64,000 bases of DNA from Thecamonas trahens ATCC 50062 (lineage: Eukaryota; Protista; Apusomonadida). The stretch spans positions 45,154-109,153 of the forward strand of contig NW_013657633.1 of assembly GCF_000142905.1 (NCBI RefSeq). Direction: 5' to 3'. Positions 42,957 through 50,592 of this stretch are shown piece after piece. A model generated the notes under the pieces. The model had not been told where the DNA came from. It saw only the letters and a program-made list of their open reading frames with translations, and ran no database searches. The translations under genes and the position numbers were made by a program. The stretch's first letter is position 1; every line of letters starts with the position of its first letter.

Positions 42957-44732
42957 TCAATGGCTCTGCAACACGTCGCTGACCACCGCGCCGCCAGCAA
43001 GCGTTACCACCCTGTCGACGCGCGCAATCGTAGCCGGATTGTGGGCAATAATGACAACGGTGGTGTCGGCAAACGAAGACTCGAGCACTCGCCCAATGGC
43101 AGCCTCGCCGTCAACGTCGAGATGGGTGGCGTACTCGTCGAGAATGAGGACTGCCGGGCGGAGGAGGAGCATCCGCGCCAGCGCCAGTCGCTGCCGCTGG
43201 CCGCCGGAGAGCGCGCTGGCCCGCGCGCCAAGCGGAGTGTGGATGCCCTGCGGGAGGGCGTCGACAACTCCGGCCATGCCCACCGCGTCAAGCGCAGCAA
43301 ACAGCTCGCTGTCGCTCGCGTCGGGCGCACCAAACCGCAGGTTCGCCGCCACGCTATCATGGTAGAGATAGACATCCTGCGAGAGCAGCGCCACCGACTG
43401 CGGCACCGAGGTGACATCAAACTCGCGCGCGTCGTCCCCGTCGTACATCACACGTCCGCGGCTCGGCTCGTACAGTCGCGCCAGCAAAAATGCCAGCGTC
43501 GACTTGCCTGCCCCGTTGGCGCCGACCAGCGCCACCGTCTGTCCGGGAGGGATGACGAGTGAAACGTCGCGGAGCGCCCAGTTGGTATCTTCGTCGCCGC
43601 CCCCGCCGTCGCTGCTGCTGCCGCCGTCGATGAGCACCTCGTCGCGAGTTGGGTACGCGAACCAGAGGCTGTCGGCGGTGAGCTCGCCGGAGAACGAGTC
43701 GAGGCTTCGGAGGCCGCGGCCAGCCTGCGCCTGCGCCTGCGCCTCGGTCTGCAGATCGAGGTAGGCAAAGACCTTGCGAAAGCAAGCCGCCGCCGTCGCC
43801 AGCTGAATGTTGACCGTGGTGAGGTTGGAGAGCGGGCCGATGAGCTTGTTGAGGTAGCCCGAGAACGAGAGAATGGTGCCGGCCGTGAGCGTGTTGGTGA
43901 ACATGACAGACGACGAGAGCGCAAACACAATGCCGGTCCCGACCGAGACTGTCGCGCCAAGAACTGTGTAGAAGACGGTTTGCTGGACGCGGGCCGAGAC
44001 CCGCGACTGGGCCAGCTTGGCCGACGCCGAGTCAAAGACCGCCGACGCCGCCGCGCCGCGGCCGGCAGCTTTGAGCGCCGCAAAGCCGTCGACGTCAAAC
44101 GAGTCTGCCAGCGCGTTGTTCATCTCCGCGCCCGCCGCAAGTCCCTCCAGCCGCAGTCCGATGAGCCGCTTGCCCCACACAGTGGCAGGAATGAGGAAGA
44201 GCGGAAGGACGCCACCAGCCACCAGCGCCAGCCGCGGCTCGAGCGAGATGAGCCGCCAGACTGCAAAGCCGGCCAGCAGGACCTGGTACACAATGTCCGG
44301 CAGTGCCGAAGAGAGCGAAGCCTGTGCGCCGGCCAGTTGGTTGTTGAACAGGCTCATCAGTTCGCCCGCCTTGTTGTGGGTGAAGAAGCCGAGCGGGAGG
44401 CCGAGGAGATGATCATGAAGCCGCGATCGGAGATGAGCAGCGATGGCCTCGCCCACATCAGCCGCCACATACGCCCGCATGACCGAGAGCACCGCCGAGA
44501 GTGCCGACCATCCCGCAAATGTCAGCGCAGTCGTGACCAACTCGGTCGGATCGCCAGCCTGAGCTGCAGGCAGTGCCTTGTCCGTCAGTCGAGCGTAGAG
44601 CCCTGGCAGAGCTGCGTCGATGTACGCCATGCCCACAAGCAGCGCAGTGAGGAGGACAAACCGGGACCGCCACCCATCACACAGTACAAGTACGCGTCGT
44701 GCCACTGCCCAGCCGCTGGTCTCCTTGGCCAT
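42957..44732 (-). CDS. ABCB-type half ABC exporter (TMD-NBD)
   Basis: Six-TM domain, Walker A GANGAGKST, signature LSGGQRQRLALAR, Walker B LILDE and H-loop IIAH. Confidence 0.92.
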   Translation of the reverse strand: MAKETSGWAVARRVLVLCDGWRSRFVLLTALLVGMAYIDAALPGLYARLTDKALPAAQAGDPTELVTTALTFAGWSALSAVLSVMRAYVAADVGEAIAAHLRSRLHDHLLGLPLGFFTHNKAGELMSLFNNQLAGAQASLSSALPDIVYQVLLAGFAVWRLISLEPRLALVAGGVLPLFLIPATVWGKRLIGLRLEGLAAGAEMNNALADSFDVDGFAALKAAGRGAAASAVFDSASAKLAQSRVSARVQQTVFYTVLGATVSVGTGIVFALSSSVMFTNTLTAGTILSFSGYLNKLIGPLSNLTTVNIQLATAAACFRKVFAYLDLQTEAQAQAQAGRGLRSLDSFSGELTADSLWFAYPTRDEVLIDGGSSSDGGGGDEDTNWALRDVSLVIPPGQTVALVGANGAGKSTLAFLLARLYEPSRGRVMYDGDDAREFDVTSVPQSVALLSQDVYLYHDSVAANLRFGAPDASDSELFAALDAVGMAGVVDALPQGIHTPLGARASALSGGQRQRLALARMLLLRPAVLILDEYATHLDVDGEAAIGRVLESSFADTTVVIIAHNPATIARVDRVVTLAGGAVVSDVLQSH

Positions 44733-45077
44733 GATGGAGGTGGTGGGGGAGGGGGGGGGGGGGGGGGTGACGTGGTAGCCAGTACCAGTGCCTGTCGGCG
44801 TGGGTGAGGACTGAGGGCTAAGGGCTGAGGGGTGAGGGCTGTGGCTGCTGTCTCTGTACGACCTGGTCAGATACTGTCAGTGCGGCCATTGTCCCTTGTC
44901 AAACTATGGAGAGTATTGCAGGTGGTAGTGGACGAGGAGTTCCGACAGGATGTGTCGGTCCGGCTGCTGTGGCTACGATCATGTCATGGCTTGTCTGTTG
45001 GCTAGTGGCGGTGGTGGTGGCGGTGGCGGCTGTCGCCGCCGGTTGCCGGCTGTCACTTGGCACTCGTCCCTGTGGAC

Positions 45078-48000
45078 ATGGCCGACATGGGCGCGGGGGG
45101 GAGGGTACCAGTCACACCGCCAGCAGCAGGCGCACCAGAGACAGAGCTCATTCCTGCTGACGAGTTTGCCGCGATAGAAGCTGCGCTGATGGCGGTGGGC
45201 GAGCAGGAACAGCGGCAGCCGCCGCCACCGCCACAGCAGCCAAAGCCTCGGCCGCCGCCGCTGCAAAGTACGACCTTTTTGGGACACTCGTCACCATGGG
45301 ACAACTGGGAGTCAACAGCCGCATATGCGCAGTCAATCTGCCCGCCGCCCACGCCTATGCACACTGGGTGGTTTCCGCTCGCTCCGTTTGTGGCCAAACA
45401 TCTCGCCCCGTCTGCCGATCGGAACGGCCGGGCCCAGTGCGTGACTCTGCGGGTGGCAGAGCGCGACGATCTGGGACTACGGTTCAAGCTCATCGCTGGC
45501 TACGACGCCAATCTGGTGGCGTTCTGCAAGTTTATCGACGGTCGTACCTACGAAGCTGCAGACAAGTCGTGGTCGTTTCCGCTCCCGGCCTACACCTACG
45601 TCGCCGCTTACCTTCGGACCGAGCTCTGTCCAGCCATCAACGCCGATTTCGACGATCTCGTCACCGGCCCCCGCCGCTCCCACCCGAGCTAGTCGCCGCA
45701 AAGTCGGCCTACGAAGCCAAGGCTGTTGACTGGTCACGGGTGCCCGAGCCGCTGCGCTCGGTGCTGCTTCCGTTCCAGCGCGACGGTGTCGAGTATGTTG
45801 TCCGCCGTGACGGCCGCGCGCTCATAGGCGACGAGATGGGTCTTGGGAAGGGCGGCCGCCCGTCCGACTCTGTCCTAACGCCTTCTGGCTGGCGCAGATA
45901 TGACGCGCTTGCACTCGGCGACAATGTCATCGGCTCGTCTGGCGCGCCGGTGGCCGTCACTGGCATCTTCCATCGCGGCGTCCTCGACCTTTTCAGAGTT
46001 GTATTTCACGACGGCGGCGCCGTCGTCGTCGACGGTGATCACCTGTGGGCGCTGGTTGGCCCGGCCCCAAGTGTGGTGTCCACCCGTGAGCTGGCCGCTG
46101 CGGTCACCGCCGGGTGTGACCTCGCCATTCCGGTCCTCTCAGGCCCGGCGCAGTTTACTCCGAGCACCGCCCGCAGCCCGCGTGATCTGGCGAGAGCGCT
46201 CCTGGATGAGGCAAGCCCATCGCGTCGCACGTCACACGCCGCGCTGTTTGCCAGCGTGGAGACCCGGACCGCGGTCTTGGGCGCGCTCGGGCTCGCCGGG
46301 AGCGGCGCATCAATGGCTACGCTGCCGACCGCAGCCGGCGCACGCGCCGCCGCAGACATCGCACTCTCGCTCGGCCGCCTCGCAGGCATCCACCCGCCGA
46401 TCAAGCCGGACTCTTGTTGGCACGTCTGGGTGGCTCCTGCTACCTGCCGTGCCCGGCCGGTGGCGCGAGTCGAGCGCTGCGGATCTGGGCCCACCATCTG
46501 TATCCGGGTTTCTGCTCCCGACGCGCTGTACGTCACCGAGGCCTTTGCCGTCACCCACAACACGCTGCAGGGTATTGCGGTGGCGAGCTACTACTCGGCT
46601 GAGTGGCCTGCACTGGTCATCGTCCCGCCGTCGCTCAAAGATGTGTGGGCCGAGGCGCTGATCAAGTGGCATCCGCACTTGAACGAGTTCAACGTGACGG
46701 TTGTGCGGAAGCGGGGCGATAGCCTCGGCTCGAGCAGCAACGGCGTGACAGTCATGTCCTACGACGCCGTCCGCCACAAGATCGACGAGATGGCCGTCGC
46801 TGCGCCGCGGGTAGTCGTTCTCGACGAGTCGCAGTACATTAAGAACGCGTCGGCGCAGCGGACCCGGCTCCTGCTCCCGTACCTGACCCGAACCGCGTCG
46901 CGGGTCATCCTGCTGTCAGGCACGCCTGCACTCTCGCGGCCGCGCGAGCTGTTTACCCAGATCGCGGCCGTGGCGCCGCGGCTCTTTCCGTCGTACGACG
47001 CGTTTGCGCAGCGGTACTGCGGTGGTGTACCCAACGCTTGGGGCCAGTACAACGGCGCATCACACCTCGCCGAGCTGGCCCAAGTCCTCGGCGTCCACGT
47101 CCTCGTCCGCAGAGTCAAGAAGGAGGTGCTCGCCGAGCTGCCGGCCAAGCGGCGGCAGCTGGTCCACATTGTTCCGGCACAGCAGCAGCTGGCATCACTG
47201 CTTCGGGCCCGCGACGGGCTCAATGCCTCGTCCAGCGCCACCAACCGCGAAGAGCGCGATGAGGCCATGACCTTGTTCTACACCGCGACGGCCATGGCCA
47301 AAATCAAGCCGGTCTCGCGGTTTGTGGCCGACCTTGTCCGCGGCAATGTCAAGTTTCTCGTCTTTGCCCACCACGCGCTCATGCTCGACGCGCTCGCCGA
47401 GACCATCTCCTCGCTCGGCGCACGGTACATCCGGATCGATGCATCGGTCGACGCCGACAAGCGGCTGCCGCTGGTCAAGCTCTTTCAGACTGACCAGAAC
47501 ATCCAAGTGGCGCTCCTTTCGCTCACAGCCGCCTCGGCTGGGCTCACCCTCACAGCCGCCTCGCACGTGGTCTTTGCCGAGCTCCATTGGACGCCTGGCA
47601 TGCTGCTGCAGGCCGAGGACCGCGTCCACCGCATCGGGCAAAGTACCCGGTCAACATACAGTATCTAGTCTGCCGAGAGTCGCTCGACGTGTCGATGTGG
47701 TCCTCGCTGGTCGCCAAGCTGTACAACCTGTCCAAGCTCGGCCTCGCCGATGACGAGCTGTCGTTCTCGAGTTCCGCGCTCCCGCCAGGCTCCGCTCCAG
47801 CGCCGGCCCGCGCCCGCGTCGCACCCAGTGAGGCCATCGCCACCGCCGACACGCCAGCCACCGCTGTCCGCAAGCTCAAGCGGACGCGGAAGAAAGCCAA
47901 GACCAGGCGCATCGGCGACGTTTCAGCCGCCAGGCTTCCGCCGGCGCGCTGCGCCCGTGCGCGCTCGCCCACAAGGCTCTTCGCCGAAGACTTTGAGCTG

Positions 48001-48135
48001 TCGTCCGACACCGATGATGGCCCACCGCCGCCCGCCAAGCGTCCTCGCCCCACAGCATCCGCAGCAGGTCGGCTGCCGCATGCCCCGGCTCGCTCTGCCG
48101 GCCCATCACCCCCTACCGTGTCCAAGTACTTTTGA
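45078..48135 (+). CDS. SMARCAL1: SMARCAL1-like SNF2 annealing helicase, interrupted by an intein
   Basis: HARP-like domain (GYDANLVAFCKFIDGRTYEAADKSWSFPL), LLPFQRDGV, IGDEMGLGK/TLQGI, VLDESQYIKN, LLSGTPALSRPRELF, KFLVFAHH and LLQAEDRVHRIGQ. Frame breaks at ~45670 and ~47641. Confidence 0.88.
45851..46561 (+). mobile_element. Class 3-type intein, 237 aa, with decayed homing endonuclease remnant
   Basis: In-frame insertion between GLGK and TLQ. Block A GGRPSDSVLTPSGW, block B DGDHLW, block F PTICIRVSAPDALYVT, block G VTHN/T. Confidence 0.93.
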
Positions 48136-48474
48136 TGCGGCGCTGCAGCGCCTCCCATCCCCCGCCGCCATCCGCAAGCAAACCCAAGGCTGATGAAAAT
48201 GCCATCCCTCCCCCCCCCCCACCCACACACACAATATATACATATATACATGTGTGTGTGTGTATGAAAACACGCACGGTCGGCGCCAATGCCCTTTAGT
48301 GCGCGCGCGGTGCGTATTTGCGGTCGTCGTGCCAGGAACCCGCCAGTGACCGCCGGGGCTGGGCTTTCGGCGGGCGGATTGGCGCCAAGTCGGTTGCACA
48401 GGTAGAGGACCGACGACGGCAGCAGAGGCAGTGGCAGCGAGGCAGGGGCAGCAGCACTTGACGCCGTGCGGGCC

Positions 48475-49328: not shown

Positions 49329-50274
49329 TTACGCCTCGGCCGGCTTGGCCATGTTCACAAACGCGCCATCGGTAGCCCGCGTCGCCAGCCACGAGTCACT
49401 GACAGCCTCCATGTTGAGCGGGCCGTAGATGTGTGGGAAGAGGACGGTCTCCAGCTCGGCCGGCGAGTCGGTCTCGCCCACCGGCGCCGGCGCCTCAAAC
49501 ACCACCTCAGCCGAGCACTTGTCCACATCTAGCTGGAGGACAACAATCGGCTCGGCGATGCCGATCAGAAACCGGTTGGCCACCGTCAGCATGGTGTCCA
49601 GCTCCGAGGTGCAGTGGATGAAGCCGCCGTCTGTGAAAGGAGGATCGTCGTGGTGAGTGACTGAGCGGGCGCAGGGCCCCACGGATACGCAGCACTTTTG
49701 AACACAATTGTGGACATGCCCATGCCCATGAACATGGGCATACCAGATCATATGTCCACCCAGTTCGTGCCCCTCCCGCCCGACATCAGCCGACATCAGC
49801 CGACATCAGCCATATCAGCCGACATCAGCCGACAATCAGCCGTCGGCACAGACGCATCGCACTCGCCATGCAGCGCATCTGCAGCTCATCCGTCTGTGCG
49901 CAGCACAACACACAAGGCATCTACACCTGTTCTCTCCATCGATCGACAAGTGCGTGTGGGGGGGAGGCCGATGGCATGAGGGGTGGCAGCATTGAGCACA
50001 GATGCATGGGCTGAGCAGAGGAGTGGCCAGGCGGGAGGNNNNNNNNNNNNNNNNNNNNNNNNNNNNNNNNNNNNNNNNNNNNNNNNNNNNNNNNNNNNNN
50101 NNNNNNNNNNNNNNNNNNNNNNNNNNNNNNNNNNNNNNGGGGGGGGGGGGGGGATGGAGATGGATGCGCACCGGCGTCAAAGGTGGGCGGCTTGTAGCCC
50201 TCTGTGGACGTTGCCTGCCATGCCTGCCATGCAGACTGCGGCATCATGTGGTAGATGGTGCTGGGATTGGCCAT
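49329..50274 (-). CDS. DUF952 family protein
   Basis: Exon 1 MANPSTIYHM…W…YKPPTFDA, intron 50171-49631 (contains the N gap), exon 2 DGGFIHCT…ANRF…FPHIYGPLNMEAV. Confidence 0.85.
50039..50138. other. Assembly gap (100 N)
   Basis: Run of N. Confidence 0.99.
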
Positions 50275-50468
50275 GGCTGCGGACAGAGTTGAGTGAGTCG
50301 GACTGTGGACAGAGGGTGTGGCGCACGAGCCGGGCGCACGAGCCGGGCGTACGAGTTGGGCGTACGAGCCAGGCGTACGAGCATGGCGTATCCAAGTGCG
50401 GAACACTCTGATTGCCCCGATGGCCCGCCCCGAGGACCCGCCCCGATCGGTTGTCCCCATCTCCATGG

Positions 50469-50568
50469 CCACCACCACCACCACCACCACCACCACCACC
50501 ACCACCACCACCACCACCACCACCACCACCACCACCACCACCACCACCACCACCACCACCACCACCAC
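50469..50568. repeat. (CAC)n microsatellite in a divergent intergenic region
   Basis: About 33 CAC units. Confidence 0.95.
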
Positions 50569-50592
50569 CCCACGCCCCCGCACCTCTTTGCC

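What the first reader, a model, noticed from the sequence alone, without database searches (positions are those of the whole stretch)
45851..46561. Class 3 (WCT) intein starting with Gly in the Walker A motif of a eukaryotic nuclear SMARCAL1-like helicase
Seen in sequence: a 711-nt in-frame insert splits DEMGLGK/TLQ exactly, and removing it restores the SNF2 motif I. It ends in His-Asn followed by Thr(+1) and begins with non-nucleophilic Gly instead of Cys/Ser. It has Trp in block B (HLW, 46046-48), Cys in block F (TICIRV, 46499-501) and Thr in block G (VTHN, 46553-55). Established: the W-C-T triplet defines class 3 inteins, which initiate splicing through the block F Cys and are known mainly from phages and bacteria. 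The familiar eukaryotic nuclear inteins (VMA1, PRP8, RNA polymerase subunits) are class 1. Inference: a prokaryote- or virus-derived intein invaded a protist fork-remodelling gene. All splicing residues are intact, so ATPase activity would depend on protein splicing, which could act as a conditional switch. I cannot tell whether this insertion is already catalogued.
Basis: partly seen in the sequence, partly recalled or inferred. Interest (0 to 1): 0.92.

Follow-up and report, generated by a model that had tools for sequence, protein, structure and literature searches.

The report
Class 3 intein in protist SMARCAL1
The SMARCAL1 fork-repair helicase gene of a marine protist (Thecamonas trahens, per earlier scan notes) has its ATP-binding loop split by a phage-type "class 3" self-splicing protein element; this is real and apparently uncatalogued, but the same kind of element was already reported in one other eukaryote (Anaeramoeba, 2023).

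Summary
A 711-nt in-frame insert (45851-46561) splits Walker A exactly (DEMGLGK | Gly1...His-Asn | Thr+1-Leu-Gln).

- **It is an intein.** Pfam and NCBIfam miss it. It matches the solved class 3 Msm DnaB1 intein (E 2e-6) and more than 6,500 database proteins. Its AlphaFold model (pLDDT 92) matches intein structures.
- **Class 3 sequence signatures are all present:** Gly1, His64, Trp66, Cys217, Thr235, His236, Asn237, Thr+1.
- **The endonuclease is dead.** The splicing module is well conserved, but one LAGLIDADG motif is deleted and the other lacks both Asp. This suggests an old, immobile element still selected to splice.
- **The host gene is eukaryotic.** The C-extein lies inside the eukaryotic SMARCAL1/ZRANB3 clade (support 100). 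The intein's relatives sit in phage-like or uncharacterised SNF2 genes.
- **The host gene is probably intact.** Independent contigs show an extra base at each apparent frameshift, which restores one intron-less gene. The strain's own reads confirm only the second.

Splicing itself and mRNA retention were not tested, because no RNA run was available.

Novelty is moderate. Class 3 P-loop inteins in SNF2 genes are known from bacteria and phages. Anaeramoeba (PNAS 2023) has class 3 P-loop inteins and an intein in HARP/SMARCAL1. Green et al. 2018 list only a CDC48 intein for T. trahens. The scan also noted the decayed endonuclease on this same stretch.

The parts
45078..48135 (+). Whole host gene: SMARCAL1-type annealing helicase, one intron-less ORF once the two bases that other contigs show are counted. 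About 1,019 codons including the intein, about 782 after splicing. The start codon is inferred as the first ATG of the HARP frame.
   Evidence: ORF pieces 45057..45692, 45296..47668 and 47587..48135. The extra bases seen in other contigs join them. Pfam finds HARP, SNF2-rel_dom and Helicase_C. Best hits are eukaryotic SMARCAL1.
45489..45602 (+). HARP domain
   Evidence: PF07443, E 2.2e-6, 27.6 bits against a cut-off of 25, residues 145-182 of ORF 45057..45692.
45667..45667 (+). Apparent frameshift 1: one C missing from a C run, either in the assembly or in the sequenced strain
   Evidence: read-laying table 4: C put in behind 45667 in the contigs of two metagenomes (X1, X4). The strain's own 2010 run X2 (3x contig) does not show it.
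45830..45850 (+). N-extein half of Walker A / SNF2 motif I (DEMGLGK); Lys is the -1 residue
   Evidence: Direct reading. Lys is the -1 residue in 99 of 180 related inteins; a further 51 read Gly because of a one-residue offset in the automatic boundary call.
45851..46561 (+). Intein, 237 aa, class 3 type, Gly1 to Asn237
45851..46180 (+). HINT N-terminal part (blocks A and B), residues 1-110. Block B His64 is at 46040-46042 and Trp66 at 46046-46048.
   Evidence: Aligned to 6bs8 residues 9-69. 31 of 39 strongly conserved family columns are kept. pLDDT 95-98.
46181..46435 (+). Remnant of a LAGLIDADG homing endonuclease, residues 111-195. The first motif is deleted. In the second, both Asp are replaced (Gly147, Ala149).
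   Evidence: Alignment with full-length relatives. 11 of 39 conserved columns are kept. Foldseek scores higher against endonuclease-bearing inteins (TMq 0.66-0.68) than against mini-inteins (0.44-0.48).
46436..46561 (+). HINT C-terminal part (blocks F and G), residues 196-237. Cys217 is at 46499-46501, Tyr227 follows, and Thr235-His236-Asn237 are at 46553-46561.
   Evidence: Aligned to the 6bs8 C-terminus. 16 of 20 conserved columns are kept. Cys217, Thr235, His236 and Asn237 are invariant.
46562..46564 (+). Thr+1, the C-extein nucleophile and the Thr of GKT
   Evidence: Direct reading. The +1 residue is Thr in 154 and Ser in 24 of 181 relatives.
46562..47638 (+). C-extein: rest of the SNF2 ATPase (motif II reads DESQ) plus Helicase_C up to motif VI (QAEDRVHRIGQ)
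   Evidence: PF00176 E 1e-20 and PF00271 E 7e-15. 42-46% identity to eukaryotic SMARCAL1. Placed in the eukaryotic clade with support 100.
47639..47639 (+). Assembly error 2: one A missing
   Evidence: read-laying table 4: A put in behind 47639 in X1 and in the organism's own run X2.

Best explanation
This is a genuine class 3-type intein lodged in the P-loop of the organism's own, vertically inherited SMARCAL1 gene.

Shown here: it belongs to the large family of phage-associated inteins that sit between the Lys and the Thr/Ser of Walker A. It keeps every residue that defines and drives class 3 splicing. Its LAGLIDADG homing endonuclease has decayed, so it can no longer home.

Inferred mechanism, following the class 3 pathway of Tori et al. 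2010:
1. The Cys217 thiol (block F:4), helped by His64 and Trp66, attacks the Lys(-1)-Gly1 peptide bond and takes the N-extein as a thioester.
2. The N-extein is passed to the hydroxyl of Thr+1.
3. Asn237 cyclises and releases the intein.
4. An O-to-N shift makes the Lys-Thr bond and recreates GLGKT.

Also inferred: because the insert separates the phosphate-binding Lys from the Mg-binding Thr, the ATPase should be dead until splicing occurs. That would explain why the splicing module stayed conserved while the endonuclease rotted. The intein probably entered by homing from a phage or bacterial SNF2 allele into the conserved motif I sequence, long enough ago for its G+C to match the host.
For: - **Sequence:** exact in-frame split of DEMGLGK|TLQ.
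- **Homology:** 6bs8, the class 3 Msm DnaB1 intein, at E 2e-6 with both ends aligned; 6,537 homologues.
- **Catalytic residues:** His64, Trp66, Cys217, Thr235, His236 and Asn237 are invariant across 37 aligned relatives.
- **Fold:** AF2 pLDDT 92.3, pTM 0.87. The best PDB matches are all inteins, including class 3 6bs8 (TMt 0.86, rmsd 2.7) and 6rix.
- **Uneven decay:** 47 of 59 conserved HINT columns are kept against 11 of 39 endonuclease columns, and both catalytic Asp of the surviving motif are lost.
- **Native host:** the C-extein lies in the eukaryotic SMARCAL1/ZRANB3 clade at SH-aLRT 100, apart from all 34 intein-bearing SNF2 hosts. It is 42-46% identical to SMARCAL1 against 24-35% to those hosts.
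- **Intein relatives:** mostly SNF2 P-loop inteins, several on phage-like contigs.
- **Gene state:** likely intact; contigs from three metagenomes are near-identical to the assembly, one spans the whole insert, and no empty allele was seen.
- **Composition:** insert G+C 0.67-0.73 against 0.62-0.69 in the flanks.
- **Single copy:** one copy in the genome.
Against: - No direct evidence of splicing, of the mature protein, or of transcription; no RNA run was on offer.
- Pfam and NCBIfam give no hit for the insert.
- The intein tree is poorly resolved (supports 80-87, only 143 columns), so the donor lineage is not established.
- Grafting WCT onto a class 1 intein does not suffice for splicing (PMC7664689), so the signature alone does not prove activity.
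- The extra C at 45667 is seen in two metagenomes but not in the strain's own low-depth contig. A strain-specific frameshift upstream of the ATPase is therefore not excluded.
- Motif II of the host reads DESQ rather than the usual DExH.
Confidence: 0.8

Rival explanations
1. Dead relic. The element is a real class 3 intein by descent but no longer splices. The protein carries a permanently split P-loop and is an inactive or non-ATPase SMARCAL1, or the gene is a young pseudogene.
For: The endonuclease is decayed. Motif II is the rare DESQ. One of the two frameshifts is not corrected by the strain's own contig. There are no expression data.
Against: All catalytic and near-invariant HINT residues are retained: 80% of conserved HINT columns against 28% of endonuclease columns. 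There are no stops in 237 codons or elsewhere in the gene. The remaining helicase motifs are intact. Contigs from three metagenomes are near-identical to the assembly. DExQ also occurs in the Creolimax orthologue.
Confidence: 0.12
2. Conditional switch. The intein splices, but its splicing is gated by redox state or metals through Cys217 and nearby cysteines, so fork-remodelling activity is tuned after translation.
For: Class 3 mycobacterial DnaB inteins are reported to be reversibly inhibited by oxidants and zinc (abstracts of PMC6195587 and PMC7360933). The insert has five Cys: 89, 189, 198, 210 and 217.
Against: Nothing in the sequence tests this. The extra cysteines are not conserved in the family. 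The analogy rests on bacterial DnaB inteins only.
Confidence: 0.12
3. The 711 nt are removed from the mRNA as an intron, so no protein splicing occurs.
For: Gene models in G+C-rich protists often hide odd inserts as introns. No RNA data were available.
Against: The borders are aag|ggc and aac|acg, not GT..AG. The only in-frame GT..AG pair nearby (45862..46587) destroys GKT-LQ. The insert is an open frame homologous to inteins along its whole length. The rest of the gene has no intron.
Confidence: 0.03
4. Contaminant, or whole-gene transfer: the helicase together with its intein came from a bacterium or phage.
For: Close intein relatives sit in HARP-like SNF2 genes on a phage-like contig and on an uncharacterised short contig (P0315, P0292). 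The neighbouring gene is an intron-less, bacterial-looking ABC exporter (scan note s1-752462).
Against: The extein lies inside the eukaryotic SMARCAL1 clade with support 100, next to opisthokont sequences. The locus lies inside a contig of at least 109 kb in a 28.7-Mb assembly. G+C matches the flanks.
Confidence: 0.03

Closest known systems
Class 3 inteins of bacteria and phages: prototype MP-Be DnaB (Tori et al. 2010, PMC2807308); solved Msm DnaB1 (6bs8) and Mch DnaB1 (6rix); Deinococcus radiodurans Snf2 intein (recalled from memory, not checked here)
   Same: Non-nucleophilic residue 1; the Trp B:12, Cys F:4, Thr G:5 triplet; His B:10; His-Asn end; Thr+1; insertion between Lys and Thr/Ser of a helicase P-loop; LAGLIDADG-type endonuclease ancestry. 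Direct sequence match (E 2e-6) and fold match (TMt 0.86).
   Different: The host is a eukaryotic nuclear SMARCAL1 orthologue rather than a bacterial or phage helicase. Only 13-16% identity to the solved structures. It carries a decayed endonuclease remnant, whereas 6bs8 and 6rix are 129-130-residue chains.
Anaeramoeba cluster 1 inteins and the Anaeramoeba HARP/SMARCAL1 intein (Gallot-Lavallee et al. 2023, PMC10710043)
   Same: Eukaryotic nuclear genes. The cluster 1 inteins are described there as apparently class 3, as all inserted in P-loops, and as sharing their atypical N-terminal residue with phage inteins. An intein in HARP/SMARCAL1 is reported for both Anaeramoeba species.
   Different: A different eukaryotic lineage (an apusomonad rather than Anaeramoebae). 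It is a single isolated copy rather than part of dozens of inteins. The paper's main text does not give the site or class of its SMARCAL1 intein, and its sequences could not be compared here.
SNF2 P-loop inteins found here (for example P0010, P0012, P0016, P0292, P0315, P0003)
   Same: Same insertion point (G-x-G-K | ... H-N | T-x-Q), same first residue (Gly or Ala), 32-41% identity over the insert and up to 50% over HINT columns. P0292 and P0315 have SMARCAL1-like exteins.
   Different: Most of them still carry an endonuclease domain (median length of all 181 related inteins 342 aa). Their hosts fall outside the eukaryotic SMARCAL1 clade, and at least two lie on phage-like or large non-eukaryotic contigs.
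T. trahens CDC48 intein (KNC47319; Green et al. 2018, PMC5784728)
   Same: Attributed to the same organism (by the paper, and by scan note s1-749525 for this genome). Nuclear gene, with an intein inside an ATPase.
   Different: That one starts with Cys and is full-length with an endonuclease, which fits a class 1 intein. It is the only T. trahens intein listed in that catalogue.

Membership tests
Class 3 intein (Tori et al. 2010) | First residue is not Cys, Ser or Thr | tested here: met
   Gly1 at 45851-45853. Relatives start with Gly or Ala.
Class 3 intein (Tori et al. 2010) | WCT triplet: Trp at block B:12, Cys at block F:4, Thr at block G:5 | tested here: met
   Trp66, Cys217 and Thr235 are aligned with the same residues of class 3 6bs8 and invariant in 37 relatives.
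Class 3 intein (Tori et al. 2010) | Thr or Ser as the +1 residue, block B His, C-terminal His-Asn | tested here: met
   Thr+1 (46562-46564), His64, His236, Asn237.
Class 3 intein (Tori et al. 2010) | HINT fold | tested here: met
   Predicted only. AF2 pLDDT 92.3. Foldseek hits are all inteins, at E 1e-8 to 1e-3.
Class 3 intein (Tori et al. 2010) | Splicing occurs and absolutely needs the block F Cys, through a block F branched intermediate | not testable with these tools
   Needs a reporter construct with Cys217Ala, Asn237Ala and Thr+1Ala mutants.
SMARCAL1/HARP annealing helicase (eukaryotic) | HARP domain upstream of an SNF2 ATPase core | tested here: met
   PF07443 at 27.6 bits against a cut-off of 25; PF00176 and PF00271. 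The pieces are joined into one frame by the extra bases seen.
SMARCAL1/HARP annealing helicase (eukaryotic) | Groups with eukaryotic SMARCAL1 orthologues | tested here: met
   Clade of 27 eukaryotic sequences plus the window at SH-aLRT 100. Best hits are named SMARCAL1, E about 1e-90. The tree used the quick method and was not rooted.
LAGLIDADG homing endonuclease (active) | Two LAGLIDADG motifs, each with a catalytic acidic residue | tested here: not met
   The first motif is deleted. The second has Gly147 and Ala149 where relatives have Asp. Pfam PF14528 gives no hit.
Spliceosomal intron | GT..AG borders whose removal gives a functional frame | tested here: not met
   The borders are not GT..AG. 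The only in-frame pair destroys motif I.

The most novel reading that the evidence does not exclude
The intein is kept in Thecamonas SMARCAL1 because it works as a post-translational, stress-responsive gate. Oxidation or metal binding at Cys217 would hold the fork-remodelling ATPase as an inactive precursor, and splicing would release it. This would be the first conditional protein-splicing switch in a eukaryotic DNA-damage-tolerance enzyme. A related point: the same-site degenerate intein in a CSB/ERCC6 orthologue of another eukaryote (P0086) hints that class 3 P-loop inteins are a recurrent, overlooked feature of eukaryotic SNF2 repair helicases.
Probability: 0.12. Interest if true: 0.8.

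Novelty: new member of a known kind. Interest (0 to 1): 0.5.

Why it matters
- **Catalogue gap.** Eukaryotic nuclear inteins are rare. The 2018 catalogue lists one for this organism, in CDC48. In the papers I could search, class 3 inteins in eukaryotes appear only in Anaeramoeba (2023). A second, unrelated lineage would show that phage-type P-loop inteins reached eukaryotic nuclei more than once.
- **Detection.** Pfam and NCBIfam gave no hit at all for this insert, so searches that rely on those models alone would miss it.
- **Biology.** In this organism a replication-fork remodelling enzyme should depend on protein splicing for any ATPase activity. Because the endonuclease is dead and the splicing core is conserved, this is a clean natural case of an intein kept only by the need to splice.
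- **Practical.** The organism can be cultured, so splicing and possible redox control can be tested directly.
- **Annotation.** The two apparent frameshifts matter for the annotation of this gene.

Tried and rejected
- **Family libraries.** Pfam and NCBIfam on the insert gave no hit. Homology came only from phmmer against the PDB and the large libraries.
- **Protein Atlas.** The Atlas does not hold the sequence and the machine was busy.
- **RNA evidence.** The look-up of sequencing runs listed no RNA run, so retention in mRNA is untested.
- **Sister-group claim dropped.** A FastTree tree of 182 inteins paired the insert with P0086. The tool flagged this as a long-branch and composition join. 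It disappeared in the HINT-only mixture-model tree, so I reject a sister relationship.
- **Codon-position G+C.** Values for insert and exteins do not discriminate, so I did not use them.
- **Assembly of P0086.** Searches for GCA_002919055 and PPCM00000000 in papers found nothing.
- **Anaeramoeba supplements.** They are not held, so its SMARCAL1 intein could not be compared.
- **One paper not held.** Tori & Perler 2011 (PMC3133030) is not in the library.
- The ligated N-extein plus C-extein sequence was not built or searched. The exteins were searched apart by reference.
Full report
**1. What the sequence shows**

On the + strand, one open frame reads through DEMGLGK (45830-45850). A 237-codon insert follows (45851-46561) that starts with Gly and ends Val-Thr-His-Asn. 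The frame then continues Thr-Leu-Gln-Gly-Ile-Ala. Removing the insert would recreate SNF2 motif I, GLGKTLQ.

**2. Is the insert an intein?**

Pfam and NCBIfam give nothing for the insert, even at E<=1. Other searches are clear:

- **Solved structures by sequence.** phmmer finds the class 3 DnaB1 intein of M. smegmatis (6bs8, E 2.1e-6) and of M. chimaera (6rix and 6riy). The N-terminal part (residues 9-68, including His-x-Trp) aligns. So does the C-terminal part, where the block F Cys aligns with Cys and Thr-His-Asn with Thr-His-Asn.
- **Large library.** A full HMMER scan of 1.84 billion representatives gives 6,537 hits at E<=1e-3 and 1,344 at E<=1e-10.
- **The family.** I pulled 181 related inteins out of the best 155 proteins.
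  - They sit overwhelmingly right after the Lys of a Walker A loop.
  - The +1 residue is Thr in 154 and Ser in 24.
  - They start mostly with Gly or Ala.
  - Median length is 342 aa.
  - Every host I scanned or that carried a precomputed annotation is a P-loop NTPase: SNF2, PhoH, AAA and AAA_5, FtsH, UvrD-like, and a TraG/T4SS-type protein. Phage records add DNA helicases and terminases.
- **Alignment.** In a 37-sequence alignment, Thr10, Pro11, Gly13, Gly23, Gly31, Gly43, Asp54, His64, Trp66, Pro94, Gly175, Cys217, Val220, Asp224, Leu226, Thr235, His236 and Asn237 are invariant.
- **Predicted fold.** AlphaFold2 with that alignment gives pLDDT 92.3 and pTM 0.87. Foldseek against the PDB returns only inteins and Hedgehog-type Hint domains. 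These include PI-SceI (E 1.4e-8, TMq 0.68), the TliVMA intein, and the class 3 inteins 6rix and 6bs8 (TMt 0.86, rmsd 2.7 A).

**3. Class 3 membership**

Tori et al. 2010 (PMC2807308) define class 3 by four features:

- a non-nucleophilic first residue;
- the co-varying triplet Trp (block B:12), Cys (block F:4) and Thr (block G:5);
- Thr or Ser at +1;
- an absolute biochemical need for the block F Cys.

They also note that such inteins lie in helicase-type proteins, SNF2 included, mostly in the P-loop.

All the sequence features are met here. The biochemical feature cannot be tested with these tools. Beyer et al. 2020 (PMC7664689) show that grafting WCT onto a class 1 intein is not enough for splicing. 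The signature is therefore necessary but not sufficient evidence of activity.

**4. Decay pattern**

I took the 98 alignment columns in which at least 60% of the 181 relatives share a residue.

| Region | Conserved columns kept |
|---|---|
| N-terminal HINT part | 31 of 39 |
| C-terminal HINT part | 16 of 20 |
| Endonuclease part | 11 of 39 |

- The HINT mismatches are mostly conservative and fall in the less conserved columns.
- The first LAGLIDADG motif is deleted.
- The second motif has Gly147 and Ala149 where relatives have the two Asp.
- The remnant still resembles the family (Arg139, Leu143, Ser-Leu-Gly 173-175).
- This fits the higher Foldseek TM-scores against endonuclease-bearing inteins than against mini-inteins.

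My reading is an old insertion whose homing function is gone, while splicing is still under selection. This is an inference. It agrees with scan note s1-751847 on the same stretch.

**5. The host gene**

*Apparent frameshifts.* The assembly shows a HARP domain (PF07443) in one frame (45057..45692), the ATPase in a second frame (45296..47668) and the tail in a third (47587..48135). I laid contigs of four public runs on 45000-48200.

- An extra C follows 45667 in two metagenomes (X1 estuary, X4 marine).
- An extra A follows 47639 in X1 and in a 2010 run of the organism itself (X2).
- With both bases the gene is one intron-less ORF, about 45078-48135.
- Caveat: the organism's own contig, at depth 3, does not show the extra C at 45667. 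That one is either a homopolymer under-call or a frameshift private to the strain.

*Environmental copies.*

- X1 record 3 (1,268 nt) spans the whole insert (45738-47005) with one difference and no gap.
- X4 record 16 covers 45658-46544.
- No joint, and so no empty allele, was seen.
- X7 carries two differences inside the insert. One is Gly152Ser in the endonuclease remnant and one is synonymous.

*Identity of the exteins.*

- The C-extein's best matches are eukaryotic proteins named SMARCAL1 (42-46% identity, E about 1e-90).
- None of the 120 listed proteins in which the motif was found has anything between GK and T/S; three had no recognisable motif.
- In a 62-row tree the C-extein lies inside the eukaryotic SMARCAL1/ZRANB3 clade (SH-aLRT 100), among animal sequences and Creolimax. 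It is separate from all 34 intein-bearing SNF2 hosts, to which it is only 24-35% identical.
- The tree used the quick method. One row without a recognisable motif (P0233) was left out.

The gene is therefore native and only the intein is foreign. By instruction, I did not build or search the ligated extein sequence.

**6. Where the intein came from**

- In a HINT-only tree (143 columns, mixture model), the insert sits with weak support (80-87) inside a set made mostly of SNF2 P-loop inteins, next to P0010 and P0153.
- Two relatives, P0292 and P0315, have SMARCAL1-like exteins with a short HARP-like N-terminus and full-length inteins at the same site.
- P0315 lies on a contig of many small unannotated genes, next to a GIY-YIG/NUMOD3 endonuclease. 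P0016 lies on a 233-kb contig with ribonucleotide reductase and helicases.
- 75 GenBank phage records hold related inteins in helicases and terminases.

The likely route is homing from a phage or bacterial SNF2 allele into the conserved motif I sequence. The donor is not resolved. The insert's G+C (0.67-0.73) is like that of its flanks, and the genome holds one copy only. Both fit long residence.

**7. Not an intron, not a contaminant**

The borders are not GT..AG. The only in-frame GT..AG pair nearby (45862..46587) would delete Thr-Leu-Gln and beyond. The locus lies inside a contig of at least 109 kb in a 28.7-Mb assembly.

The organism name, Thecamonas trahens, comes from earlier notes of this scan. 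It fits the CDC48 intein noted in the same genome, which Green et al. 2018 list as the only T. trahens intein. I did not verify the name independently.

**8. Mechanism**

The steps follow the published class 3 pathway and are inferred for this element:

1. Cys217 attacks the Lys-Gly1 bond.
2. The N-extein moves to Thr+1.
3. Asn237 cyclises.
4. An O-to-N shift restores GLGKT.

Until then the Walker A Lys and Thr are 237 residues apart, so ATP hydrolysis should be impossible. Conditional control by redox or zinc, as reported for mycobacterial DnaB class 3 inteins (abstracts of PMC6195587 and PMC7360933), is possible but has no support here.

**9. Novelty**

*Already known:*

- Class 3 inteins in SNF2 P-loops of bacteria and phages.
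- Class 3 P-loop inteins in nuclear genes of Anaeramoeba, and an intein in its HARP/SMARCAL1 (PMC10710043).

*Apparently new:*

- This particular element. Green et al. 2018 list only the CDC48 intein for T. trahens.
- The 2023 paper limits other eukaryotic nuclear inteins to 15 KOGs: 13 from Green et al., whose only apusozoan entry is that CDC48 intein, plus two DNA polymerases.
- Full-text searches for intein with Thecamonas, and for intein with SMARCAL1, found nothing else.

It is a new member of a known kind, in a second eukaryotic lineage.

*A further case seen in passing.* P0086 is a CSB/ERCC6 orthologue (E 4e-120 to human ERCC6) from NCBI assembly GCA_002919055.1. It carries a 227-aa degenerate intein of the same type at the same P-loop position. 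It is not a close relative of this organism: it shares 45% identity with the T. trahens ERCC6 orthologue, which has no such intein.

**10. Verdict**

- **Observation:** confirmed.
- **Interpretation:** partly supported. Identity, class signature, eukaryotic host and foreign origin hold. Activity and the switch idea are untested, and the novelty was overstated.
- **Interest:** 0.5.

Noticed in passing
window 45667 and 47639: Two apparent one-base gaps split the SMARCAL1 gene into three frames. The extra A behind 47639 is confirmed by the organism's own reads. The extra C behind 45667 is seen only in two metagenomes, so a strain-specific frameshift is not excluded.
   Followed up: yes
L002:249-3437 (protein P0086; NCBI GCA_002919055.1, PPCM01004312.1): A G+C-rich, single-exon CSB/ERCC6 orthologue of an unidentified eukaryote carries a 227-aa class 3-type intein with a decayed endonuclease at the same GLGK|T position. 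This is a second eukaryotic SNF2 repair gene with this kind of element. It is not sister to the Thecamonas intein in the better tree.
   Followed up: partly
window 46814-46825 (VLDESQYIKN): Helicase motif II of the host reads DESQ instead of DExH. Among 219 relatives, 217 have His and 2 have Gln; one of the two is the Creolimax orthologue that sits near the window in the extein tree.
   Followed up: partly
window 42957-44732 (-): Intron-less 591-aa half-transporter with ABC_membrane and ABC_tran domains, of bacterial exporter style, immediately upstream of the helicase gene on the other strand. The scan also noted it (s1-752462).
   Followed up: partly
window 46304 and 46357: One marine metagenome (X7) carries G>A (Gly152Ser, in the endonuclease remnant) and C>T (synonymous) inside the intein. 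Near-identical contigs also occur in estuary and marine metagenomes from 2016 to 2025, so the organism or close kin is present in the wild.
   Followed up: partly
window 45963-46069, 47033-47139, 47354-47460: In the estuary metagenome X1 the summed contig depth jumps 3- to 5-fold over these short bins, with loose ends at 46030, 46034, 47081, 47127 and 47382. Contigs of other organisms share short stretches at 90% or more. The first bin covers intein block B.
   Followed up: no
window 49921-50583: Run of N (an assembly gap) next to a long GTG/CAC-type repeat that translates as poly-Val on the minus strand.
   Followed up: no
L003:8106-8714: In the phage-like contig that holds P0315 (a SMARCAL1-like helicase with a full-length intein), a free-standing GIY-YIG/NUMOD3 homing endonuclease gene directly follows the helicase gene.
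   Followed up: no
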